In this document: piece by piece, positions 3,059-62,695 of the stretch | Position numbering within the stretch: the first letter of the stretch is position 1 | Layout of the letters: every line of letters begins with the position of its first letter | Source: Macrostomum lignano | Lineage: Eukaryota | Direction: 5' to 3' | DNA length: 64,000 bases | Assembly (NCBI GenBank): GCA_002269645.1 | Contig: NIVC01002476.1 | Location: 23,032-87,031, forward strand | Position numbers and translations under genes: made by a program | Notes under the pieces: model-generated | Database searches by the model: none | What the model saw: the letters and a program-made list of their open reading frames with translations, nothing else | What the model was told of the DNA's origin: nothing

Positions 3059-3086
3059 AATATAACCTAATGTAACCGCCAACCAG

Positions 3087-3773
3087 AGGTGAGCTGCGAC
3101 ACTGACATCCTGATTCCCAAGACTGCCGCTGGACTCGCCATGCTAGAATCGCTGAACTACAAATCGAACGCCGTCATCAGCTTCGACAATGGCACCGTTG
3201 TGAACACAAACGCTAGCAGTGTCAACAATCAGGAGCTGATGCCGTACAAGACTGTGCTGACCTTCTTTTGTCAAGATGGCATGGACACTGGCACTGGGGC
3301 GCCCATCGCTCTCTGCCGGAGCAGCGGCGACTGGAATCTCTCTAGCCTGCCAACCTGCACCAGTGAGAGCTACTGCTGCCACCCACCCCTCCTCCTCACT
3401 CTGCACCGCACCCACCCCTCCTCCTCATTCTGCGCCGCACCCACCCCTCCTCCTCCTCACCCTCCTCCGTACCCACCCCTCTGTACACTGCATTTTTAAT
3501 CAATGTTTTGACTCTCCGCTCTCCCAACTTTTGTTTTCAGAAGTCTCCGGCAAATTGGACGTGCGCGGTAAATTTTTCGTGCCGCCAGCCGTGGAGGCGG
3601 CCGCCGCTGGTTCAGTGGGCGCTTTGGCCATCACCATTTCTGTGCTGTTTGGCATCAGCCTGCTCATGCTGGACCTGTCAACTCTGTCCAGAGATCTGGC
3701 CTTGATGAAGCGAAATCTCACTAATTTGAAACGGCGACTGGATGCTAGGCGTCTGCAAGCTAACAAGCCTTGA
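3087..3773 (+). CDS. Last two exons (3087-3362, 3541-3773) of a sushi/CCP-domain single-pass membrane protein; 5' part outside window
   Basis: Phase 1-1 exon encodes F-x-C-x-x-G...A-x-C-x3-G-x-W...P-x-C (sushi-like). CAG|AG acceptor, A|GTGAGA donor, TTTTCAG| acceptor at 3540. Last exon has a hydrophobic segment (ALAITISVLFGISLLML), a basic tail and TGA at 3771-3773. Confidence 0.75.
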
Positions 3774-5319: not shown

Positions 5320-8300
5320 ATGTCGGACTTCATCAACTGTTTGATCGTATCTGAGGAGGATTTGCTGTGCAATGGCACCGAGTATCACCTTGCGGATCAC
5401 AAGGCCACGCCAGAGGACGCGTTGTTCTGGATTTACTTGGGCATTTATGCTCTGCTAGTACTCGGAGCTGGTAAGTTGCGCGTCTGATTGAGTCTGTTTC
5501 GTCTTTCATTTTTTTCAGTTTCTCTGTAGAAGCATTGTGCTCGTATAATATGCGTCTACGACATATAATGAAATACTGATTGACCTTCGAGCATCTGACC
5601 TAACCTGTCTTTGAGCATCTGATCCAACCTGTCTTTGAGCATCTGACCTAACCTGTCCTTGAGCATCTGACCTAACCTGTCTTTGAGCATCTGACCTAAC
5701 CTGTCTTTGAGCATCTGATCCAACCTGTCTTTGAGCATCTGACCTAACCTGTCCTTGAGCATCTGACCTAACCTGTCTTTGAGCATCTGACCTAACCTGT
5801 CTTTGAGCATCTGATCCAACCTGTCTTTGAGCATCTGACCTAACCTGTCTTTGAGCATCTGACCCAACCTGTCTTTGAGCATCTGACCCAACCTGTCTTT
5901 GAGCATCTGACCTAACCTGTCTTTGAGCATCTGATCCAACCTGTCTTTGAGCATCTGACCTAACCTGTCTTTGAGCATCTGACCTGTTTTTGCTCATTCT
6001 AGCTATCTTAGAACATTTGCCTAAACTCATCTTTGAGAATTTCACCACTTGTCATAAACTGTCTTTGAGCATCTGTCCAATGTGTTAAGTGATTAAACGT
6101 TTTAACTACGCCAAGTACAGAAAGCGCTCTCGACTCTGAAACACAGGTCTCTTAGTACTCTCACTGGTAACCCATATGCTTTTGCAACTCTTACCTGCAA
6201 CCGAACACTCAAATACAGGCCTAATGAGCGGCCTAACCATAGGCCTGTTAAGTCTCGACCTGCTCAGCTTAAAAGTGCTCAGCGATTCTGGCACAGGCGA
6301 GACGAAACGTTTTGCCAAGCGTCTGTTCCCCATCATCAGACAGCATCACTGGCTGCTGGTGACTCTGTTGCTAGGCAACGCGGCTTGCGTTGAAGCAATG
6401 CCGATATTTTTAGATCGGGTTTCCGATCCAGTGACTGCTGTCCTTGTCTCCGTCACGGCTGTACTGTTTTTTGGAGAGTGAGTTTCGCTTTCTATTTTTG
6501 CTACTGCCAGTAGTTATATATTGTTGAAATATTAAAGTGTAGGAAATTTGTCGACTTTTTCAGAGTCATTCCACAAGCTCTGTGCACCAGATACGGATTG
6601 AAGATCGGGTACTATTGCTCTCCGTGAGTTGAACGCGTCTATGCGCTTGCCTTTTACACTGTACGTGACAGGCAGGGCCAATCCCAAAAGCAACGGGTGT
6701 GTTCAGGTCTGACGATCTTAAAGTCAAGGTTAGGGTTAGGGGTTAGGCAAATCGTCATCATCAGGGCATGCCACAATCGTCACAACAAACCATAAATTTA
6801 TAAACTAAAACAGAATCAAGGCGATAGACAAATAGCTTTAATGCTCACAGCACTCTGATTTGGTGTTCCACCCCACCGCTAGCAAGCTGCACATTCAAAT
6901 TAATGTTCGAAACTTAATAATTCCATAAAACCATCCATCCAACCATCCATACAACCATCCATCCAACCATCCATCTAACCATCCATCCAAGCATACATCC
7001 ATCCAACCATACATCCATCCAACCATCCATCCAACCATACATCCAACCATACATCCAACCATCCGTCCAACCATACATCCAACCATCCATCCAATCATCC
7101 ATCCAACCATCCATCCAACCATCCATCCAACCATCCATCCAACCATACATCCAACCATCCATCCAACCATCCATCCAACCATCCATCCAACCATCCATCT
7201 AACTATCCGTTTAACACTTTGAACAGCTGCATCGTGTGGTTGTCACAACACGCAGTGCAATCTAACAAGCAAGGGCTCTCTTGTTCTTGTGTGAAGGTGT
7301 CGCTTAGTTTTTCTTATGTAGGAAACGCTCTGATCAACAGAGCAACGGAATTCGTGAACCATCTAACGTAATAGTTCAACCAATATTAAAACCTGCTCAA
7401 AAACCGTCTCACCCTCCAGCATAGTGTACGTCTGCATGGCCGTGATGTCCCCGATTGCGTTTCCCATATCCAAACTGCTCGACTGCATTCTGGGTACCGA
7501 CCACGAGACCGTGTTCAAACGCGAAGAGCTCAAATCTCTGGTCAGTTTCCATGGCCCGGAGACTCGCAGACAGCCGCTTAGCGGCCGGATGTCTGCGCGG
7601 TCTCGGACGAGCTCGCTGGTGTCCAACGCGACTGCAGGGGCCGGCGAGTTGACATCGGCGGGCAGTGGTGACAACCCGAGTGACCAGCACAGACGGTCGG
7701 TGCTGACAAGAGACGAGGTAAGTATTGTTTAGTACCTCTGAATAAAATGTATCGATGGTGTCAAAGCAATAAGTAAGTTGCAATTTTTTAAAGACCATCA
7801 GGGCAAGCCAATTGACCTGCTTCTTATTGATTGGCTTTCTACATTGAGTTTCTTACCAGGAAACTGTTATCCAGCCATTGTTTTGCTACCAAAGCAAAAA
7901 CTCGCACAAAACTCAACGATTTTACAATAGAGGTCCTCCGATGTTCCCATTCCCCATTTACACACGAGGTGTGAGTGTAGATAACAATTGCAGTAAAAAT
8001 CTCGCAGACAACTATTTTTCACAGACAACTTCTTACGTGTTTTGGCCTTAGATCAGATGACTTTTACTTGGCTGTACGACCTTATCCGTGCATTATTTGC
8101 ACAATCTGTCAGTGGCGTATGCAGGAATTTTAATTAAAAGGGCCGCTAACCCAAAGAAGCGCCAATATTTGGTTTATTGGTGGGGGCGCTTCTGTCTCTT
8201 GGTGAGCGCCCACTGTCTCTTGGTGAGCGCCCACTGTCTCTTGGTGAGCGCCCACTGTCTCTTGGTGAGCGCCCACTGTCTCTTGGTTGGCGCCTGTCTC

Positions 8301-49700: not shown

Positions 49701-52700
49701 GCCTGTCTGCCTGTCTGCCTGTCTGACTGACTGTCTGTCTTAGTGTCTGTCTGTCTGTCTGTCTTAGTGTCTGTCTTAGTGTCTGTCTGTCTGTGTGTCT
49801 GTCTGTCTGTCTGTCTGTCTGTCTGCCTGTCTGCCTGTCTGCCTGTCTGTGTTATTAGCCTGTCCATAAGCCTGTGCCCGCACTTCACTCATGAATACCC
49901 TAACCCTTCCCCATCAAACCCTCTCTCAGGCTCTGAAGACGCCTCGAACCGCGTCGAACGCTCGCCCAGTGACGTCATCATCTGGCCGGCTGGTCCGTCT
50001 TGGCACAGCCTCCATGCTGAGCAGCCCGGATGGACCCTTCATCAATTTGAGCCGATTGAACTTTTCCAAATACGCCCCAAAACCGCAGATGAGTCGGGCG
50101 CTATTCGAGTACATTTTATATCACGAGAACGACGTTAGAACGGCTCTTCAACTTGCTGCCATGGCGACAGAGGCGCACCAGTTCCAGGACTGGTGGTGGA
50201 AGCTGCAGCTGGCCAGGTGCTACTACAAGCTGGGCCTGTTCAGAGACTGCGAGCAGCAGCTGCGATCTGCCATGAAGCAGCAGGAGTGCCTGGAAAGCTA
50301 TTTGTTGCTAGGCAAAGTGTACACCAAGCTCGACCAGCCGCTTGCGGCCATAGACAACTACAATCAGGGCCTCACTAAGTTTCCCAACGACCGCTGTCTG
50401 CTTACTGGATTGGCTCGGATTCAGGAGGTTGGAGACTCTTCGAGTGGCTTGGGGATTGGGGTTGGATTAAGGTTTAGGGTTGGATTAAGAATTAGGGTTA
50501 GATTAAGGATTAGGTTAAACTAAGGATTACAGGGCTAGATGAAGGATTAGGGCTAGATTGGAGATTAAAGTTAGATTTAGTATTAGAGTTAGAGGTTGGA
50601 ATATGGCAGAGGGCGGATTGGGGGAGCGGCCAGATCGGGGCAGAGGGCGGATTGGGGGAGCGGCCAGATCGGGGTAGAGGCCAGATCGGGGCAGAGGGGC
50701 GGATCGGGGCAGAGGGGCGGATCGGGGCAGAGGGGCGGATCGGGGCAGAGGGGCGGATCGGGGCAGAGGGGCGGATCGGGGCAGAGGGGCGGATCGGGGC
50801 AGAGGGGCGGATCGGGGCAGAGGGGCGGATCGGGGCAGAGGGGCGGATCGGGGCAGAGGGGCGGATCGGGGCAGAGGGGCGGATCGGGCAGAGGGGCGGA
50901 TCGGGCAGAGGGGCGGATCGGGGCAGAGGGGCGGATCAGATGACGTGTTTCGCACCGCCTCTCCCCCACAGGGCCTGGGCAACCTGGAGAAAGCTGCCGA
51001 GTGCTACAAAGATGTTCTTCGCTACGACGCCATGAATGTGGAAGCGTTGGCGTCCATAGCAACCCAATATTTCTATAACGACCAACCTGAGCTGGCTCTG
51101 AAACTCTACAGGTGAGGGGAGAAGAGCAGAAAAGAGCAATTCCTCCGACTCTCATCACCGCAGGCTGTGGTAGAGAGACTGGTAATTTTCCTCAGAGATT
51201 CGTCTTCCTGCCCGACATCCCCATGCAGTTCGGCCGGCCCTAGAAACCCCTCAGGCCTCCAAAAGAATTATTTTTTACAGTCTCGAGTTTCAAATCCGAG
51301 AAGGCTTGCTTCCTGAAATTAATATTCTTTCCCGTCGAAGAGAGATGCAGAAGCGGTTTCAATTGCTATTCGATTCTGAAGGTGCCGTTAGGTCTGCATG
51401 CTGACGTCTTCGAAAACTACCAGCTTCACTTCTTGACTGACTGGCAGCAAGTGACAGATGTCAGACAAATTTTGGCAAACCTTTTGTATTGCGTGCCAGC
51501 GAAACCTCTAATTCGTTCTAGGATGGGTCATCAATGACCCTAGGTCATCAATGACCCTAGGTAATCAATGACCCTAGATAATCAGTGACCCTAGGTAATC
51601 AATGACCCTAGGTCATCAATGACCCTAGGTAATCAATGACCCTAGATAATCAGTGACCCTAGGTAATCAGTGACCCTAGGTAATCAGTGACCCTAGATAA
51701 TCAGTGACCCTAGGTAATCAATGACCCTAGGTAATCAATGACCCTAGGTAATCAATGACCCTAGGTAATCAATGACCCTGGGTAATCAGTGACCCTAGGT
51801 AATCAATGACCCTAAGTCATCAATTACCCTAATTCATCAATGATCCTAATTAATAAATGACCCTAACTCATCAATGACCCTAGTTCATCATGAATTTCTC
51901 ATGACCCTAAATCGTTAAAAACCCTACGTCATCAATGACCCTAAGTCTTCATGACCCTAACTCATCAGTGACCCTAAGTCTTCATGACCCTAACTCATTA
52001 ATGACCCTAAATCATTAATGACCCTAAATCGTTAATGACCCTAGGTCATCAATGACCCTGGCCTAAGTCTCCAATGACTCATTTCTAATGACCCATTATT
52101 TCATGAGCCATGCTTAAAAAAATACTATTTCCAGACGGCTGCTTCAGCTGGGCCTCGCCTCTGCCGAGCTCTACACCAACTTGGCCCTGTGCTGCTTCTA
52201 CGCTCAGCAGTACGACATGTGCCTGACCTGCTTTGACCGCGCCATCACCGTGGCTAAGAAGGAGGAGCTGGCTGATGTGTGGTACAACCTGGGTCACGTG
52301 GCATTGGTGAGACAGTCTGGGAGTTCAAAGCTGCTTAAATTAAATAGTGTATATGATTCAGGGCAAAGGTAGAAAACAGTGAGTATTGAGTAGATCACAG
52401 TGAGTAGAGAGTAGATTAAAGTGAGTAGAGAGTAGGTTTCAGTGAGTAGAGAGTAGGTTACAGTGAGTAGAGAGTAGATAACAGTGAGTAGAGAGTAGAT
52501 TACAGTGAATAGAGTAGATTACAGTGAATAGAGTAGATTACAGTGAGTAGAGAGTAGATTACAGTGAATAGAGTAGATTACAGTGAGTACAGAGTATAAT
52601 ACAGTGAGTAGAGAGTAGATTACAGTTAATAGAGTAGATTACAGTGAGCAGAGAGTAGATTACAGTGAGTAGAGAGTAGATTACAGTGAGTAGAGAGCAG

Positions 52701-54390
52701 ATTACAGTGAGTAGAGAGTAGATTACAGTGAATACAGTACGAGTAGATTACAGTGAGTAGAGAGAAGGCTATAACTTACAGAAGAAAGTGTAGAGGTGAG
52801 ACAAAACTTCGCCCTTCAAATGTACCCCTAGCCCCACCTTTTCAAGGTGAGACGCAGATTTCCTTTCAAAGCAGCGTGACCTAGCCGCTAGCTGTGCTGC
52901 TTAACCTGAAAATTCACTCAGAAGAACAGCTGCTTAATTCTTGTTATCCAAAGATAACCCAAGGAAAAATAAACTTGGGATGTTATGTACTTTTACAGTT
53001 ACTTGCTTGCTTGTATGACATATTCCCAGATAGAAAGAGTAGGATATGATTGGTGAAATCTGAGAGAGTTTGAGATCAAAATTGACGAGACAGAAAGGGT
53101 TTTAGATGAAGGGATGGGCATGAAGAGATGGACAGGAAGGAACGTGAGATGAAGGGATGGACAGGAAAGGATGCGAGATGAAGGGATGAACAGGAAAGGA
53201 TGCGAGATGAAGGGATAAACATGAAGTGATAAGCATGAAGGGATAAACATGAAGTGATAAACATGAAGGGATAAACATAAAGGGATAAACATGAAGGGAT
53301 GCACATGAAAGGATGGACAGAAAGGGATGTGAGATGAAGGGATGGAAAGGAAATGATGTGAGATAAGGAGATAGACTGGAAGGGATATGAGATAAAGGGG
53401 TGTGAGATGAAGGGGTGCGAGATAAAGGGATGGACAAGAAGGGGTGTGAGATGAAGGGGTGTGAGATGAAGAGGTGTGAGATAAAGGGATGGACAAGAAG
53501 GGGTGTGAGATGAAGGGGTGTGAGATAAAGGGATGGAAAAGAAGGGGTGTGAGATGAAGGGGTGTGAGATGAAGGGGTGTGAGATGAAGGGGTGTGAGAT
53601 AAAGGGATGAATAAGAAGGGATGTGAAATGAAGGGGTGTGAGATGAAGGGGTGTGAGATGAAGGGGTGTGAGATGAAGGGGTGTGAGATGAAGGGGTGTG
53701 AGATAAAGGGATGGACAAGAAGGGATGTGAGATGAAGGGGTGTGAGATGAAGGGGTGTGAGACAAAGGGATGGACAAGAAGGGATGTGAGATGAAGGGGT
53801 GTGAGATGAAGGGGTGTGAGATGAAGGGGTGTGAGATGAAGGGGTGTGAGATGAAGGGGTGTGAGATGAAGGGGTGTGAGATAAAGGGATGAATAAGAAG
53901 GGATGTGAGATGAAGGGGTGTGAGATGAAGGGTTGTGAGATAAAGGGATGAATAAGAAGGGATGTGAGATCAAGCAAGGACAGAAAAGTACACAGTTACA
54001 CATGGAGACTTCCGCTCTGATTCAAGCCACTTTCCTGACGGCACCAATCCGACTGCCTTCCCGCAGGCGGTGGGAGACCTCAGCCTCTCCTACCAGGCGT
54101 TCCGCTTGGCCCTATCCTACAACAACGATCACGCGGAGGCCTACAACAACTTGGGAGTGCTGGAACTGCGCCGCAACAATCTGGAGATGGCGCGCTCGTT
54201 TTTTCAAGCCGCCAGCACCCTCAGCCCGTCGATGTTCGAGCCGCACTACAATGTGGCAATCATGGCTGAGCGCATGGGTGACCTTCAATCAGCCTACCAG
54301 TCGGTCAATCGGGCCCAGCAGTTTTTCCCCAACCATTCCGACTCCAAGGATATGCTGAATGCGCTTAAAGTACATTTCTCTGAGATTTAA
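48432..54390 (+). CDS. TTC8: Tetratricopeptide repeat protein 8 / BBS8 (BBSome subunit), 501 aa; exons 48432-48533, 49125-49394, 49930-50427, 50972-51111, 52135-52306, 54067-54390
   Basis: Signature segments RPGTSL, RLGTASML..DGPFINLSRLN, ALFEYILYHEND, DWWWK, CCFYAQQYD, DVWYNLGHVA, HAEAYNNLGVLE. GT-AG introns are phase-consistent (1506 nt). Confidence 0.95.
49395..49850. repeat. 12-bp (GTCTGCCTGTGT)n grading into (GTCT)n, TTC8 intron 2
   Basis: The first unit is the splice donor itself (CAG|GTCTGC). Confidence 0.93.
50605..50938. repeat. 18-bp GC-rich minisatellite (GGGGCAGAGGGGCGGATC)n, TTC8 intron 3
   Basis: Direct periodicity; preceded by degenerate TTAGGG-like sequence. Confidence 0.94.
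51530..52060. repeat. 17-bp minisatellite (TCAATGACCCTAGGTAA)n, TTC8 intron 4
   Basis: Direct periodicity. Confidence 0.93.
52390..52765. repeat. ~21-bp minisatellite (AGTGAGTAGAGAGTAGATTAC)n, TTC8 intron 5
   Basis: Direct periodicity. Confidence 0.9.
53100..53970. repeat. 15-bp minisatellite (GATGAAGGGGTGTGA)n, TTC8 intron 5
   Basis: Direct periodicity. Confidence 0.92.
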
Positions 54391-55668: not shown

Positions 55669-56080
55669 AACTTTATTTGGATATGTTGTGTCCCCATTCG
55701 ATGAGCTTTGACAGTTAATTAACACAGTGGCAGCCCTACAACCTGTGGTTATACGACCTACAATTCTTGTCTCAGTGCTGCGTGATTAGGAGCCGTATTT
55801 GTCCCCGGGGCTGCAGCAGGGAGCGAGTTGTTTTTATTGGAGAGCTGCACAGATGAGAATTGAGGAGTATGTGGGAAGCTATCTATGTATTCATCTATCT
55901 CTTATCTAAGTAAGATAAGTAAGTCTCATTGAGTGACGTCAAGTGCTTTATTTCAAGGGTAAATGAACGAAGAAATTGAGAAGAAAACTCATAGTTATGC
56001 AACACTTTCCGCATATATTTAATGATATTTGCTCTCATAGTTGGCTTTTTCGAATTCAAGGGTGTCAATTGCTCTTGGAC

Positions 56081-56602
56081 TTAGTTCCGGTCGGAATCTC
56101 CTGCGCTCAAGCCGCGCTTCCAGAACGGAGCTCGCTTCCAGAACGGAGCCCGCTTCCAGAATGGGGCGCGCTTCCAGAACGGAGCCCGCTTCCAAAACGG
56201 AGCTCGCTTCCAGAACGGAGCCCGCTTCCAGAATGGGGCGCGCTTCCAGAACGGAGCCCGCTTCCAAAACGGAGCTCGCTTCCAGAACGGAGCCCGCTTC
56301 CAGAACGGAGCTCGCTTCCAGAACGGAGCGCGCTTCCAGAACGGAGCCCGCTTCCAGAACGGAGCCCGCTTCCAAAACGGAGCTCGCTTCCAGAACGGAG
56401 CCCGCTTATTTTCGCCATGCAGTCCAGCAGTCCACCGAGCGATGATTTTCTTTGTCACATCCTCATTCAGGATACTACCGGTACTGCGCATCTCCCGTGT
56501 CAGGTGCCTGCTGGTGCTTTCCAAAGCGGAGGAGGCGTCATCCACTGCAACAACCGCTAGAAGGACCGATGCGAACAACAATGTCAGCGACAACCTTGGC
56601 AT
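56081..56602 (-). CDS. Neuropeptide/peptide-hormone precursor, 173 aa: signal peptide + spacer + 16 x (APFW-KR) + short C-terminal peptide
   Basis: Hydrophobic N-terminus MPRLSLTLLFASVLLAVVAV; every APFW is flanked by KR; repeat units differ only at third codon positions. AATAAA lies 129 nt past the stop (55947-55952, minus strand); TTGCAG acceptor just 5' of the ATG; TATAAA at 56821-56826 (minus). Confidence 0.92.
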   Translation of the reverse strand: MPRLSLTLLFASVLLAVVAVDDASSALESTSRHLTREMRSTGSILNEDVTKKIIARWTAGLHGENKRAPFWKRAPFWKRAPFWKRAPFWKRAPFWKRAPFWKRAPFWKRAPFWKRAPFWKRAPFWKRAPFWKRAPFWKRAPFWKRAPFWKRAPFWKRAPFWKRGLSAGDSDRN

Positions 56603-56954
56603 TGTAGCGCAGGTTTCACTGCAACATAGATTGAAAAATTCAAACGTACCTGGTATATTACGAGCGTAAAAGTCTATACGATGACATCTGAACGTGAATG
56701 CATCAAAGACATGTTTACCTTAAAGGCTTTCGATACAGTCAATAATTCACAAAATATTTTGCCGCTAATCCGCCTTGTTGACTCAGAGTGGGGCGAGCGG
56801 AGCGACCGTGAATTACCGACTTTATAAGATGCTGGTGGATTGTCAGCCTTTGCCGATTTGCTGGAAGTCTGTGAGCTCTGGTTGGCTCGATGAATACGGA
56901 TCTTTTGAGGGCTCGTGTCTTCGTTGTCTGCTTCCTGTCTTCTGAAATTTTTTC

Positions 56955-58500: not shown

Positions 58501-61500
58501 CTCCCCCCTCCAATTGCGGAGCTCGGAGAAAACAGACTGTAACCGAAGTCTTAAATGGTTGAATAGCTTATATGATCAAAACGAAGCGGGTAGGACAGTT
58601 GAAATAAATTCTACATGAGAAATCGAACATTAAAAAAAGAGAGAATATTGAGAAAAACTGTCAGAAGACGTTATACGTTACAAAGGTTAATAATAAATGT
58701 AATCATTTTGGCGAAAAATAACAAAGAACTTGTCGGTTCGCTGTTTCACGCGATACGGCCCTGAGTACGGCCCTCGAGCGGCGACCGCACACGATCGACC
58801 CGAACCCAGACGAATTCAGCCATTTTCAGGTCCTTGGGTACGTAGCTCCGTGGTTCGTGCGTCGTCGCATGTGGACTCGGTAGCTATGTCAGCAGTTCCT
58901 GCAGCCGCGTCCGAATATCCGTTGGGGCGAGTGGTTCGGAAGTCAGAACGCGCGGAACCATCGGAAGCTCGCCGGTAACTCTGGTGAACGGTGATACTCC
59001 TTGATCGTCAGGTGCAACGTGCATCGCGAGAAGAGCCACAGGTAGGTCTGTCAGCCAATCATTGCCTCGAGGACGTAGCATCGTCTTCAGGGTGCGATGG
59101 GCTCGCTTGAACTTGCCATTGGTTTGAGGGTGGTACGTCGTTGTGCGTAATCGATGAAAACCAATTGATGACGAGACCGAGTGAAAGAATTCTGATTCGA
59201 ACTGGCGCCCGCGATCAGTGATTACATACAGTGGCACTCCGTAGCGCGAGACCCAGGACGAGACGAATGCATGGGCGACTACTTCCGCGGTTATTGATTC
59301 CAGTGGTGTAGCTTCTAGCCAGCCAGTCGAGCGGTCGACCATCGTGAGAAGGTAGCGGGCAGACTGGTGGCCGAAGTGGTGGCATTAGCTGGTGGGAGTG
59401 GTCCTACAATATCGATGTGTACCACCTCAAAGCGATTTGATGGTAGTGCAAAGGCCTGTTGCGGGGAGACAGTGTGACGAGTTACTTTACTCCGTTGGCA
59501 GTCCTGGCAGTTCCAGCAGTAGGTCTTGATGGACTTGCACATTCCGGGCCAAAAGTAACGTTCTGTGATCAGTTTTGCTGTTTTACGGTAGCCGAAATGA
59601 CCAAGTCGATGGAAGGAAGCAATCACGGCGTCGCGGAGAGACGGCGGAATGATCGGGCGAGGATACAGCGTTGACGTCTCACACCAAACGACGACGTCTT
59701 TGTCCAGAGAATACAATCGAATATTTCGTGCCGGTGAGAACGACTCCGGTCGTTGTCCTTCAGCGATACTGGGCAGATCAACAGGGAATTGGCTTGATGG
59801 GGCAGCGACTACAGCGTCTGTTGCGATGTTGGACACGTGATTATTCACTGGGAAGTCAGGCAGTCGAGAAAGGGCATCTGCTATTACGTTGTCTGCACCG
59901 CGAATGTACTGGAAATCTGCCACGTACTCGGAAAAAAACGGTCAAGTAGTCCTGATTGCGATCTGACGTAGTGGTGCGATTGGCGTGGAAGGCCTGAGCT
60001 AGTGGTTTATGATCGGTGAACAAGGTCACGATCCGTCCTTCAATGAGGCTGCGGAAGTGCAACACTGCCAGGTACGCTCGTACGCCGCGAGTAGTTCTCG
60101 GTCGAACGTGATGTACGTCCTTTGGGATGACGACAACTTCTTGCTGAACATGCCGAGAGGTGACGTTCCGGTTGAAGAGGTTTGATGAAGAACGGCACCA
60201 ACACAGTCGGCTGAGGCATCAGTGTACAGGTATCTCCCCGCAGTACAGTTTGGGTCCGGATGATGCAGAAATAGTCTCTCTGAGAGAACTTGTTTGATGT
60301 TTTCGAAAGATTTCTGATGCTGCTCTGTCCATTGTAAGTTTCCTGCTGACTGTAGTCTTGCAGCGGATAGATGCAGTCAGCGAAATTTGGAACGAATCGG
60401 TGGTAGAACCCGACGACGCCGAGGAAGCGCCGAAGTGCGTTCGAATCCGTGGGTGTCGGTCAGTCAGTGATTATTTGGATCTTCTTCTGGAGAGGTCTTA
60501 TTCCTTCAGGAGTCACGCGGTGGCCAAGTAAATCTACCTCGGACTGAAAGAATTCACATTTCTTCAAGTGAACCTGCAGTCCGTGTGTTCTTAGGCGGTC
60601 TAAAACTTGTTCTAAATGCGAGTAGTGGTCCTCTCGAGTCTTCGAGAATGTCAGGACATCAACGATGTAAGAGATAACGAATGACAGTCCGTGAAAAACA
60701 GAGTCGATGAAATGTTTAAATGTTTGTGCTGCATTCCTCAGGCCGAAGGGCATGCATGTGTACTCGAACAATCTAAACGATGTGGTGATAGCGGTTTTTC
60801 AGATATCCTCTTCTGCGATTAGAATTTGATGAAAGGCGCGAACAAGGTCTAACTTTGAAAACACAGTGCTTCCGTGTAGGTACCGAGTGAAGGTTTGAAT
60901 ATGTGGAACCGGATAGTTGTCCGGCTTTGTTGGTTTGTTCAGTTCACGATAGTCACCGCACGGACGCCAGCCAGCTCCCTTGGTGCCATGTGGAGGGGTG
61001 ACGCCCAAGCGCTTGAGGATGGTCTGAGGTAGCCGGCATCGATTAGCTGCTGAAACTCCTGCTTTACAGCCTGCAGTTTTGCAGGGTGCAGTTGCCGGGG
61101 TCGCAAGTGAACCGGTTGTCCACTACCAGTGTCTAGCCGGTGAACAGTGTCGTGCTTGACCTCTGAAGCTGGCGGAAGGGCTCCGCCTTCAACGAAAGAA
61201 AAACAATCTGCAAACTTTGTAAACAGCGTACTCGTCCGAGAATCCAGGTTGAGTGGCAGTTCTACCGACACAGTGAATGGGCCAGAATGAACATTTGAAA
61301 TTGACAAGGTAACAGTGGACAGTCCTGTTTCTGAGTCTCGAACGTGTTTGCGCTGGCAATCGACAACTGGCAAATCGACAATCTGGCAATCGACAACTAA
61401 CCCATGGTGAGCCAAGAAGTCGTAACCAATGATGGGTTTTACCACTGAGGCGACGAGAAAGGTCCACTGGAAGCGCGTCGCAAACGGTGGATTGAGACAT

Positions 61501-62695
61501 CCAGTAGGACCGACCCGCAAACTGGTATGGCGGCTCCGGTAGCAGTAATTAAACGAACGTTTGTATCTTGAACGAGTACGTTAACGAGGTGAGGTGGAAC
61601 AATGGAAACCGAAGCTCCGGTATCCACAAGAAACTTGCTGTATGTATTGTTGATTTTAACATCTAACTCCAAACAGGTGGTCGATGGTATCTTGGCACTG
61701 CGCACCGCGACCTCGGTCGCAGTGCGACTTAGCTTTTTGGCTGTCGAGAAGGTGATGGTGAACGCGACTGAGATGGCGTTTTTTCATTAGGATGCGGCAC
61801 TCGGATCGGAAGCGAGCTGTCCTTGGGAAACTGGCACCAGGGGCGACACGACTATGGCGGCCATAGTAGAGGTGTGAGCGGCAAACGACGGGGCGTTGGC
61901 CAGGCTTAAATGGGTCTGTTCCAGTGGGCTTACCAGGTGCATGTCGTTGTGGAGCTTGCTCAGAACGCTGTTAGGGTGTCCGGTCTGCACCGGTCTGCTG
62001 AATTGGGCAAACCGTCGCTGGTGATGGAGAGCTAAGGCCTCTAACGATCAACATTGAGTCAGCAATCTCGGAAATTTGCTGGGATGACTGCTGTTGGAAT
62101 CCCAAAAGTGCGATACGAAGGTCCTGGGGTAGACAGCGCATCAGCGTGGCGTTGAGGAGTTCCTCGTCGGGCTGTATCCGGCACTGCTCCATCTTGCTCC
62201 GGAGCTTGCGCATGAAAATTGATGGCTTGTCTCCTCCGAGGTCCGAGACTTGCAATACTTCCGAAACCTTCTCCTGCTGGGACTTCTGCTGAGTTGATGT
62301 TATCGTTGTCTTCAATTGTTCGTACTGTTTTGGGAGTCTGAGCGGACAAATGCAGGGCCGCGATATCTTCCGGTAGATGAGAAACTAGGTGGTAAAATTT
62401 GGCGGTCTCGTTGGTCACCCTGTTGAGCATAAATTGGGCCTCCAGCGTGAGGAACCATGCTTCCGGGTTGTTGCGATAGAAGATTGGCAGCTTCAGGTGG
62501 GCCAGGGAGACTATAGCGGTGTCGGCGGCGTTTCCTAATGCAGGTGTAACCACTGGTGCGGCCGAACTTGGTGCGGCTTGCGTGGTTGTAGGTGTGTAGG
62601 AGCGGAACTGTTGCTGGCACTGTCCGTCATTGGATTCGTCTTATGTGAGTACTGAGTATGCGGGTAATATCTTTCGCCGCCTCACCAGACCAATT

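What the first reader, a model, noticed from the sequence alone, without database searches (positions are those of the whole stretch)
56081..56602. Prohormone encoding 16 copies of a non-amidated tetrapeptide, APFW
Seen: a signal peptide, a spacer, then 16 x APFW-KR. The 18-bp units vary only at third positions of Ala (GCT/GCC), Pro (CCG/CCA), Phe (TTC/TTT) and Arg (CGA/CGG/CGC); no unit changes an amino acid. This separates it from the ~25 non-coding arrays in the window and indicates selection on the peptide. Established: KR sites are prohormone-convertase cleavage sites, and amidation needs a C-terminal Gly, which is absent here. The nearest motif I know is molluscan APGWamide (APGW-G-KR); short non-amidated multicopy tetrapeptides such as achatin also exist. 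Inference: a possibly undescribed W-peptide family or a derived APGW/RGW relative. The N-terminal Ala-Pro could be trimmed by a dipeptidyl peptidase. Spacer peptides (IIARWTAGLHGEN, GLSAGDSDRN) may also be released. I do not recall a described APFW peptide but cannot search.
Basis: partly seen in the sequence, partly recalled or inferred. Interest (0 to 1): 0.88.

Follow-up and report, generated by a model that had tools for sequence, protein, structure and literature searches.

The report
Flatworm prohormone with 16 APFW peptides
This is very probably a real flatworm gene (Macrostomum lignano) for a secreted precursor that is cut into 16 identical four-residue peptides (Ala-Pro-Phe-Trp), and tapeworms and a monogenean carry similar '...Phe-Trp' peptide precursors that I could not find described in the papers I could read.

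Summary
Window 56081..56602 (-) is a 173-aa ORF: signal-peptide-like N-terminus, spacer, 16 exact APFW-KR units, short tail. All variation among units is synonymous.

The genome matches Macrostomum lignano Mlig_3_7 in size and scaffold count. It is full of 18-bp satellites that also give open 'xxxWKR' frames, so an open frame proves nothing. Four other lines of evidence do:
- A diverged second copy has 20 units, with many synonymous and only three single-unit amino-acid changes.
- A second gene has an unrelated signal peptide and spacer but the same APFW-KR array.
- Precursors with the same architecture occur in tapeworms (Taenia, Dibothriocephalus, Schistocephalus, Spirometra) and in a monogenean (Protopolystoma).
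- Satellite controls vary non-synonymously.

It is not the APGWamide orthologue. The same genome has a canonical KR-APGW-G-KR precursor elsewhere, and the amidation Gly and C-terminal Cys pair are absent here.

Best reading: a convertase-processed multi-copy peptide precursor giving free-acid APFW. It belongs to a flatworm '-FW-OH' family that I could not find named, though Koziol 2016, McVeigh 2009 and Preza 2022 were not readable. Transcription, cell type and the mature peptide are untested. New member of a known kind; moderate interest.

The parts
56081..56602 (-). Complete single-exon CDS of the APFW precursor (173 aa plus TAA stop)
   Evidence: It is the first ATG in a frame that stays open back to 56719. 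There is an A at -3 (gctacaATGc).
56546..56602 (-). Predicted signal peptide, aa 1-19 (MPRLSLTLLFASVLLAVVA), with cleavage inferred after Ala19
   Evidence: Arg3 sits in the n-region. The hydrophobic core has an 11-residue Kyte-Doolittle maximum of 2.85, followed by a hydrophilic stretch. Val17 and Ala19 fit the -3/-1 rule. This is a heuristic; SignalP was not available.
56408..56545 (-). N-terminal pro-region, aa 20-65 (VDDASS...VT-KK-IIARWTAGLHGEN), with a KK site at 56447-56452
   Evidence: It differs from the C312 second copy by 4 non-synonymous and 3 synonymous changes, so it is only weakly constrained, as precursor spacers usually are.
56402..56407 (-). First dibasic KR site, in front of the array
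56114..56401 (-). Sixteen 18-bp units, each encoding APFW plus KR
   Evidence: The 5 distinct variant types (16 cells) are all synonymous.
56084..56113 (-). C-terminal tail GLSAGDSDRN (no Cys, no Gly-KR)
   Evidence: The amino acids are identical in the C312 second copy, with 2 synonymous changes.
55947..55952 (-). AATAAA, candidate polyadenylation signal about 130 nt after the stop
   Evidence: It is conserved in the C312 second copy. Inference only; no transcript data.
56821..56826 (-). TATAAA, candidate TATA box about 220 nt upstream of the ATG
   Evidence: It is conserved in the C312 second copy. Inference only.
56619..56718 (-). Candidate 100-nt intron in the 5'UTR (AAG|GTAAAC ... TTGCAG|TG). 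Alternatively the AG at 56619-56620 is a trans-splice acceptor 16 nt before the ATG.
   Evidence: Both splice-site motifs are conserved in the second copy, whereas an alternative GTACGT donor at about 56648 is deleted there. M. lignano trans-splices many mRNAs (PMC5730564). Inference only.

Best explanation
The ORF is a real protein-coding gene of the flatworm Macrostomum lignano. It encodes a preproprotein of the regulated secretory pathway.

Inferred processing steps:
1. The signal peptide is removed after Ala19.
2. A furin/PC2-type convertase cuts after each Lys-Arg.
3. A carboxypeptidase trims the two basic residues.
4. No Gly precedes KR, so no amidation follows.

One precursor therefore yields 16 copies of free-acid Ala-Pro-Phe-Trp, plus spacer fragments. 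The peptide most likely acts as an extracellular signal, either a neuropeptide or a gland-derived hormone or pheromone, through a receptor that is still unknown.

The gene belongs to a family found so far only in flatworms. Its members have a signal peptide, a spacer, and several peptides that end in Phe-Trp-COOH and are separated by KR. In Macrostomum one peptide has been amplified to 15-20 copies in two paralogous genes.

What is shown: the architecture, the purifying selection on the peptide, the paralogues and the orthologues. What is inferred: the processing, the secretion and the signalling role.
For: 1. Architecture: a signal-peptide-like N-terminus, KR before and after every unit, and a good start context.

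2. Selection. Across the three M. lignano arrays (window; C312 second copy, 20 units; gene B, 15 units), 13 of 18 distinct variant types and 51 of 57 variant cells are synonymous, against 22% expected (p = 9e-6). The five non-synonymous variants (APFS, SPFW, TPFW, DPFW, a terminal KK) affect one or two units each.

3. Gene B (G000 C629, C2328, C215). Its signal peptide and acidic spacer show no similarity to gene A. It still carries the same APFW-KR array, whose consensus differs only by a synonymous Pro codon.

4. Negative controls. In the same genome the 18-bp satellites that read ETxWKR or VTLWKR have frame changes, no signal peptide, and mainly non-synonymous variation.

5. Positive control. 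The canonical APGWamide precursor of the same genome has the same layout.

6. Orthologues. All have a signal peptide, a spacer and peptides ending in FW between KR sites, without Gly.
   - Taenia solium / T. asiatica: SPFW, SDFW, YGNQAFW, RENFW. UniRef names the T. asiatica protein 'Neuropeptide'.
   - Dibothriocephalus, Schistocephalus, Spirometra: SPHFW, YHAFW, SPAFW, SAFW, ASFW.
   - Protopolystoma xenopodis: GVRHFW ... GPIRAFW.
   - A metagenome contig: QFW, APFW, DPFW, EAFW, EPFW.
   - Every hit of this type that carries an organism name is a flatworm.

7. Processing machinery. The genome has many P_proprotein-domain loci. An M. lignano PC2 homologue is expressed in the nervous system and is essential (PMC4490696).

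8. Precedent. Non-amidated flatworm peptides have been confirmed by mass spectrometry (Sm-npp-26, xFDPILF-OH; PMC9495596).

9. Flanking signals. TATAAA, the splice-site motifs and AATAAA are conserved in the second copy, in flanks that are otherwise 5-6% diverged.
Against: - No transcript, expression or peptide evidence could be obtained. The exact protein is not on record, and records of this genome may be masked.
- The signal peptide was judged by rule of thumb only.
- E-values between repetitive precursors are inflated. Non-coding satellites reach 1e-23 against the query. Homology with the cestode genes therefore rests on shared architecture and on the taxonomic restriction, not on scores.
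- Gene A's spacer is not acidic, and its protein does not end in FW as the cestode precursors do.
- The window array alone contains few independent mutations.
- The genome is about 15% tandem repeats, so fortuitous arrays are common.
Confidence: 0.8

Rival explanations
1. It is a non-coding 18-bp minisatellite that happens to lie behind an ATG and a hydrophobic stretch. The ORF would be fortuitous.
For: The window holds several dozen tandem arrays. The genome is about 15% tandem repeats. Many 18-bp satellites give long open 'xxxWKR'-like frames. Five of six frames are open across this array. Phase-biased variation also occurs in two non-coding arrays of the window.
Against: Variation is synonymous-only or synonymous-biased in three independent arrays. 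A second gene with unrelated flanks carries the same peptide. Flatworm orthologues conserve the FW-KR pattern. The satellite controls behave the opposite way.
Confidence: 0.04
2. It is the Macrostomum version of the APGWamide/RGWamide (planarian cpp-1) gene, in which Gly changed to Phe and the amidation Gly was lost.
For: The peptide has the Ala-Pro-x-Trp pattern and the same multi-copy KR layout. The profile search retrieves APGWamide-type precursors (KR-APGW-G-KR repeats; source organisms not given) at E = 1e-12 to 1e-4.
Against: The same genome has a canonical signal peptide + spacer + KR-APGW-G-KR precursor of 13-17 units at C2598, C2092 and C67. The APFW gene has no Gly before KR and no C-terminal Cys pair, which are the features Thiel et al. 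2021 use to define the family. The cestode and monogenean relatives share only FW, not AP-x-W. An old duplication of the APGW gene cannot be excluded, but nothing supports it.
Confidence: 0.06
3. It is a processed multi-copy peptide precursor, but not a neuronal one. The peptides would be exported from gland cells (prostate or seminal fluid, adhesive, pharyngeal or epidermal glands) as a pheromone, an allohormone or a defensive peptide. Alternatively, dipeptidyl-peptidase trimming of X-Pro leaves the dipeptide Phe-Trp as the final product.
For: Nothing here identifies the cell type. The very high copy number (15-20 units across up to 7 loci) suits bulk secretion. In M. lignano and in the metagenome relative P0001, nearly every peptide starts with X-Pro or X-Ala (AP, DP, SP, TP, EP, EA), which are the classic dipeptidyl-aminopeptidase substrates. 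FW is the only part conserved across the family.
Against: The cestode peptides do not consistently begin with X-Pro or X-Ala (YHAFW, SDFW, RENFW). An X-Pro N-terminus is also a common way to stabilise true neuropeptides. The only name any source gives a family member is 'Neuropeptide'.
Confidence: 0.25

Closest known systems
Unnamed flatworm 'x-FW-OH' precursors: Taenia solium KAL5967552.1, T. asiatica A0A0R3W293 ('Neuropeptide'), Protopolystoma xenopodis VEL13158.1, and those of Dibothriocephalus latus, Schistocephalus solidus and Spirometra
   Same: Signal peptide, spacer, several short peptides ending in Phe-Trp placed directly before Lys-Arg, no amidation Gly, a small precursor (about 100-180 aa) encoded in a single exon where this could be seen, and flatworm-only among hits that carry an organism name.
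   Different: The parasites have 4-6 different peptides of 4-11 residues, and the protein ends in FW. Macrostomum has 15-20 copies of one tetrapeptide plus a short non-FW tail. The N-terminal regions cannot be aligned. Homology is inferred from architecture, not from a significant non-repeat alignment.
APGWamide / RGWamide family (molluscan APGWamide, annelid RGWamide, planarian cpp-1 VPGW/TPGWamide)
   Same: A multi-copy tetrapeptide with an Ala-Pro start and a Trp end, KR flanks, and a signal peptide plus spacer plus array layout. A canonical member exists in the same genome.
   Different: There is no Gly, so the peptide is a free acid, not an amide. Position 3 is Phe, not Gly. There is no C-terminal Cys pair. 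It is a separate locus from the true APGWamide gene.
Achatin-type and other non-amidated multi-copy short peptides (the achatin GF[AG]D comparison is from my own knowledge; Schistosoma Sm-npp-26 xFDPILF-OH is from PMC9495596)
   Same: KR-flanked, repeated, non-amidated short peptides released from one precursor. Sm-npp-26 shows that flatworms do make free-acid neuropeptides, confirmed by mass spectrometry.
   Different: There is no sequence similarity. The motifs are unrelated (G-F-A/G-D and FDPI[LI][FY]).

Membership tests
Classical peptide prohormone (regulated secretory pathway precursor) | N-terminal signal peptide | tested here: inconclusive
   Arg3, a hydrophobic core with a Kyte-Doolittle maximum of 2.85, and V-x-A at -3/-1 all fit a signal peptide. 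No trained predictor (SignalP) was available.
Classical peptide prohormone (regulated secretory pathway precursor) | Repeated peptides bounded by dibasic convertase sites | tested here: met
   There are 17 KR sites bounding 16 APFW units, plus one KK in the spacer.
Classical peptide prohormone (regulated secretory pathway precursor) | The peptide is conserved more strongly than the spacer, across paralogues and orthologues | tested here: met
   Synonymous bias has p = 9e-6. The spacer differs at 4 of 67 residues between the two gene A copies. The gene B spacer is unrelated, yet the peptide is identical. FW-KR is kept in cestodes and a monogenean.
Classical peptide prohormone (regulated secretory pathway precursor) | Processing enzymes present in the organism | tested here: met
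   37 matches to PF01483 (P_proprotein) in G000. A PC2 homologue is expressed in the nervous system and is essential (PMC4490696).
Classical peptide prohormone (regulated secretory pathway precursor) | Transcribed in neurons or endocrine cells, with the mature peptide detectable | not testable with these tools
   No transcriptome, expression or peptidomic data could be reached. The exact protein is not on record.
APGWamide/RGWamide (cpp-1) family | C-terminal Gly before the dibasic site (amidation) and a GW-amide end | tested here: not met
   All units are APFW-KR with no Gly.
APGWamide/RGWamide (cpp-1) family | Two C-terminal Cys residues 20-30 aa apart, downstream of the peptide copies (Thiel et al. 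2021) | tested here: not met
   The tail is GLSAGDSDRN followed by a stop, with no Cys. A further downstream exon is not expected, because the stop codon follows directly and an AATAAA lies 130 nt later.
APGWamide/RGWamide (cpp-1) family | It is the organism's orthologue of the family | tested here: not met
   Separate canonical KR-APGW-G-KR precursors lie at C2598, C2092 and C67.
Flatworm x-FW-OH precursor family (unnamed) | Signal peptide, spacer, and at least 3 peptides ending in FW directly before KR, without Gly | tested here: met
   compared.
Flatworm x-FW-OH precursor family (unnamed) | Protein terminates in ...FW, and the spacer is acidic | tested here: not met
   Gene A ends in GLSAGDSDRN and its spacer is not markedly acidic. 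Gene B has an acidic spacer and ends in DPFWKKRTPF. The metagenome relative P0001 also ends in KRDGN.
Flatworm x-FW-OH precursor family (unnamed) | Homology demonstrable outside the repeats | tested here: not met
   The N-terminal regions show no alignable similarity, even between genes A and B. The MAFFT alignments are conserved only in the FWKR columns.
Non-coding minisatellite | Variation indifferent to codon position, frame not preserved between copies | tested here: not met
   See the synonymous bias above. The frame and the peptide are preserved in 6 of 7 loci. The C215 copy has frame breaks.

The most novel reading that the evidence does not exclude
APFW is the Macrostomum representative of an undescribed signalling-peptide family restricted to flatworms. 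The family would be defined by a free Phe-Trp C-terminus and would date back to the base of Rhabditophora, since it occurs in Macrostomorpha, Monogenea and Cestoda. It would have its own receptor, distinct from the xPGWamide system. That would offer a tractable free-living model (transgenesis and RNAi in M. lignano) for a peptide system shared with tapeworms.
Probability: 0.4. Interest if true: 0.55.

Novelty: new member of a known kind. Interest (0 to 1): 0.42.

Why it matters
Peptide signalling in flatworms is studied both for its evolution and as a source of drug targets against parasitic worms. Most families described so far are amidated.

This family would be non-amidated, shared by a free-living basal flatworm, tapeworms and a monogenean, and absent from about 1,300 other spiralian precursors. 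It would add one ligand family to that catalogue. M. lignano is transparent and open to RNAi and transgenesis, so the family's function and receptor could be worked out there.

The extreme amplification of a single tetrapeptide also makes peptide detection and knock-down phenotypes easy to test. The amplification amounts to 16-20 copies per gene, in two genes with several genomic copies each.

This does not change any general concept. It is another instance of a well-understood gene type.

Tried and rejected
- **Literature strings.** Full-text searches for APFW, FWKR, xFWKR strings and SPHFW found nothing relevant.
- **Key papers not held.** Koziol et al. 2016, McVeigh et al. 2009 and Preza et al. 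2022 could not be read. I therefore cannot say whether the FW family has an 'npp' number.
- **Indirect literature checks.**
  - The 30 Taenia crassiceps npp orthologues, derived from Koziol's 325 sequences, contain no FW precursor.
  - The Schmidtea prohormone supplement has no FWKR.
  - The Thiel 2021 spiralian set has none.
  - The polyclad atlas supplement has none.
- **Pfam.** No family matches the M. lignano or relative precursors.
- **Transcript evidence.** The exact protein is not on record.
- **Other genome hits to the query.** Those inspected (C996, C1643, C3357, C611, C3329, C158, C882, C61, C1194, C808, C1883, C146, C3412, C597, C2916, C2964/C4567) are plain satellites without KR pairs or signal peptides.
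- **A 31-nt intron just upstream of the ATG.** Rejected, because its donor site is deleted in the second copy.
- **RNA folding of the array.** Uninformative; the self-complementarity comes from the repeat.
- **Fungal Kex2-processed repeat or RiPP precursor (ustiloxin-like).** Considered at the outset and dropped once the genome matched a flatworm assembly.
- **Metagenome scan.** It added only one more ANFW-type contig from an unknown AT-rich eukaryote.
- **SRA run numbers of the Logan hits.** These could not be resolved to organisms.

Full report
**What is there.** The minus strand of window 56081..56602 carries a 173-codon ORF. Its parts, in order:
- MPRLSLTLLFASVLLAVVA, which looks like a signal peptide. 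It has Arg3, a hydrophobic core with an 11-residue hydropathy maximum of 2.85, and V-x-A before the likely cut.
- A 46-residue spacer containing one KK.
- KR.
- Sixteen exact APFW-KR units.
- The tail GLSAGDSDRN and a TAA stop.

The ATG is the first in the open frame and has an A at -3. Only the third positions of Ala, Pro, Phe and Arg vary, which gives 4 variable columns, 16 variant cells and 5 variant types, all synonymous.

**Which organism.** The window is G000:C2476:23032-87031, in a genome of 764,410,778 bases in 5269 contigs. The Macrostomum lignano Mlig_3_7 assembly has 5270 scaffolds and 764,424,962 bp. It is about 15% simple and tandem repeats, and 180 Mb of it sits in duplicated blocks (PMC5730564). 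The identification rests on these numbers and on the flatworm affinities of the genes found here.

**Is it more than chance?** An open frame is not evidence in this genome.
- Five of six frames are open through the array.
- The genome search with the protein returned about a hundred places. All of those inspected, apart from the gene A and gene B copies, are non-coding 18-bp satellites that read ETRWKR/ETIWKR, VTLWKR, SHPAWK and so on, with frame changes and no signal peptide.
- They score as well as E = 1e-23, so E-values between repeats mean little.
- Within the window, two other arrays also concentrate over 80% of their variation in one phase.
- For the window array alone, p is about 5e-3 for the columns and 5e-4 for 5 of 5 synonymous types, with few independent events. 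Units 7-10 and 11-14 are a duplicated block.

**Evidence that it is a gene.**

1. Copies of gene A. There are two near-identical copies (C2656 at 99.9%; C4727 at about 98-99.9% over the aligned segments, 3.5-kb loci) and a 92%-identical second copy on C312. The C312 copy has 20 units, 5 synonymous variant types spread over 26 cells, and only 3 non-synonymous changes, each in a single unit (APFS, SPFW, TPFW). Its spacer differs by 4 non-synonymous and 3 synonymous changes. The flanks differ by 5-6%.

2. A second gene, B. It lies on C629 and C2328, with a frame-broken copy on C215. It has a different signal peptide (MRGSAILRAGLCLILSAALVTASA) and an acidic spacer with no similarity to gene A. It nevertheless carries 15 units of APFW-KR, two of them DPFW. 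The unit consensus differs from gene A by one synonymous Pro codon.

3. Pooled over the three arrays, 13 of 18 variant types and 51 of 57 variant cells are synonymous, against 22% expected (p = 9e-6).

4. Controls. The C996 satellite has one non-synonymous variant in 42 cells and one synonymous variant in 1 cell. The C3357 satellite has 0 synonymous and 9 non-synonymous types. The bona fide APGWamide array behaves like the APFW arrays.

5. Flanking signals are conserved in the second copy: TATAAA (56821-56826), an AAG|GTAAAC donor (56718), a TTGCAG acceptor 16 nt before the ATG (56619), and AATAAA (55947-55952). These gene-structure details are inferences.

**Relatives elsewhere.** Word-seeded and exhaustive profile searches returned small precursors with the same plan: a signal peptide, a spacer, then peptides ending in FW directly before KR, never with Gly.
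- Dibothriocephalus latus, Schistocephalus solidus, Spirometra: SPHFW, YHAFW, SPAFW, SAFW, ASFW-stop. In D. latus there are two tandem single-exon copies.
- Taenia solium and T. asiatica: SPFW, SDFW, YGNQAFW, RENFW-stop. UniRef names the T. asiatica protein 'Neuropeptide'.
- The monogenean Protopolystoma xenopodis: GVRHFW ... GPIRAFW-stop.
- Several unnamed assemblies. One is a 660-nt metagenome contig whose peptides are QFW, APFW, DPFW, EAFW and EPFW.

Every hit of this type that carries an organism name is a flatworm. The string FWKR does not occur in the roughly 1,300 spiralian precursors of Thiel et al. 2021, nor in the planarian prohormone catalogue. Only FW-KR is conserved. The Ala-Pro start is a feature of the Macrostomum lineage and of the metagenome relative. 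Homology is inferred from architecture and taxonomic restriction, because no non-repeat region aligns.

**Relation to APGWamide.** The profile also pulled in APGWamide-type precursors weakly, so I searched the genome with one of them. M. lignano has a canonical precursor at C2598, C2092 and C67: signal peptide, acidic spacer and KR-APGW-G-KR repeated 13-17 times.
- xPGWamides are already known in flatworms: planarian cpp-1 and a polyclad.
- Thiel et al. define the family by amidated GW peptides plus a C-terminal Cys pair.
- The APFW gene has neither feature and is a separate locus.

It is therefore not the APGWamide orthologue. An ancient duplication cannot be excluded, but nothing supports it.

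**How it most likely works.**
- Shown: the precursor architecture, purifying selection on APFW and on the KR sites, and the presence of convertase genes and of an essential PC2 homologue expressed in the nervous system (PMC4490696).
- Inferred: co-translational signal-peptide removal, cleavage after each KR, carboxypeptidase trimming, and no amidation. This would release 16 APFW-OH per precursor ([M+H]+ 520.2554), together with VDD...VT, IIARWTAGLHGEN and GLSAGDSDRN.
- Precedent: free-acid flatworm neuropeptides have been confirmed by mass spectrometry (Sm-npp-26).
- Unknown: whether the producing cells are neurons or glands, and whether X-Pro trimming shortens the peptide to FW.

**Known or new.** I found no description of APFW or of the FW family in the searchable literature. 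The three most relevant papers were not readable. The T. crassiceps list built from Koziol's sequences lacks the family, which weakly suggests it is unnamed. The UniRef label 'Neuropeptide' shows that someone or something has flagged a member.

**Verdict.** This is very probably a real gene and a new member of a well-known kind. Interest is moderate. It would be higher if the family proves undescribed and bioactive.

Noticed in passing
G000:C2598:16988-17500 (L033 1411..1908, -), G000:C2092:180374-180900, G000:C67:990808-991400 (L035 1246..1827, -): A canonical APGWamide precursor in the same genome: MTAFATSRLLLLLIVSVAV..., an acidic spacer, then KR-APGW-G-KR repeated 13-17 times. It looks like the Macrostomum counterpart of planarian cpp-1 and polyclad APGWamide. 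I did not check whether a downstream exon carries the family's Cys pair.
   Followed up: partly
G000:C31:426700-427500 (L014 1213..1971, -): About 40 tandem units reading MGFG-KR, which would give MGF-amide. Variation is biased towards synonymous changes (5 synonymous types in 21 cells against 4 non-synonymous in 6 cells). No signal peptide or start exon was found within 1 kb, and the array edges decay. It could be another peptide gene with an upstream exon, or a satellite.
   Followed up: partly
G000:C215:103046-103198 (L012): The third copy of the gene B APFW precursor has frame breaks inside the array: APFWKR units continue as LHSGS... and then resume in another frame. This is either an assembly indel or a decaying copy.
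   Followed up: no
window 58887-61783 (-): Pieces of an LTR-retrotransposon pol gene (aspartyl protease, RVT_1, RT_RNaseH_2, rve integrase) spread over several frames, about 2.3 kb upstream of the APFW gene on the coding strand.
   Followed up: partly
window 49870-54387 (+); 7367-7729 (+); 3071-3496 (+): Exons of neighbouring genes sit between the satellites: TPR repeats (49.9-50.5 kb and 54.0-54.4 kb), a CNNM transmembrane-domain exon, and a Sushi-domain exon. The APFW gene lies tail-to-tail with the TPR gene.
   Followed up: partly
P0010 and P0014 (Logan assemblies, organism unknown): Long precursors (472-571 aa) with dozens of KR-flanked peptides ending in FY, including APFY and AAFY runs. 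P0010 also has a Cys-containing N-terminal domain. This is a possibly analogous '-FY-OH' multi-copy family in another animal.
   Followed up: no
P0025 and P0028 (Logan SRR31655983, SRR35213535, SRR26425195): FW-type precursors carrying 4-6 x-FW-KR peptides (mostly xxAFW or ANFW). They have an extra C-terminal region, and both end in ...FNPTGW. The organisms are unknown.
   Followed up: no
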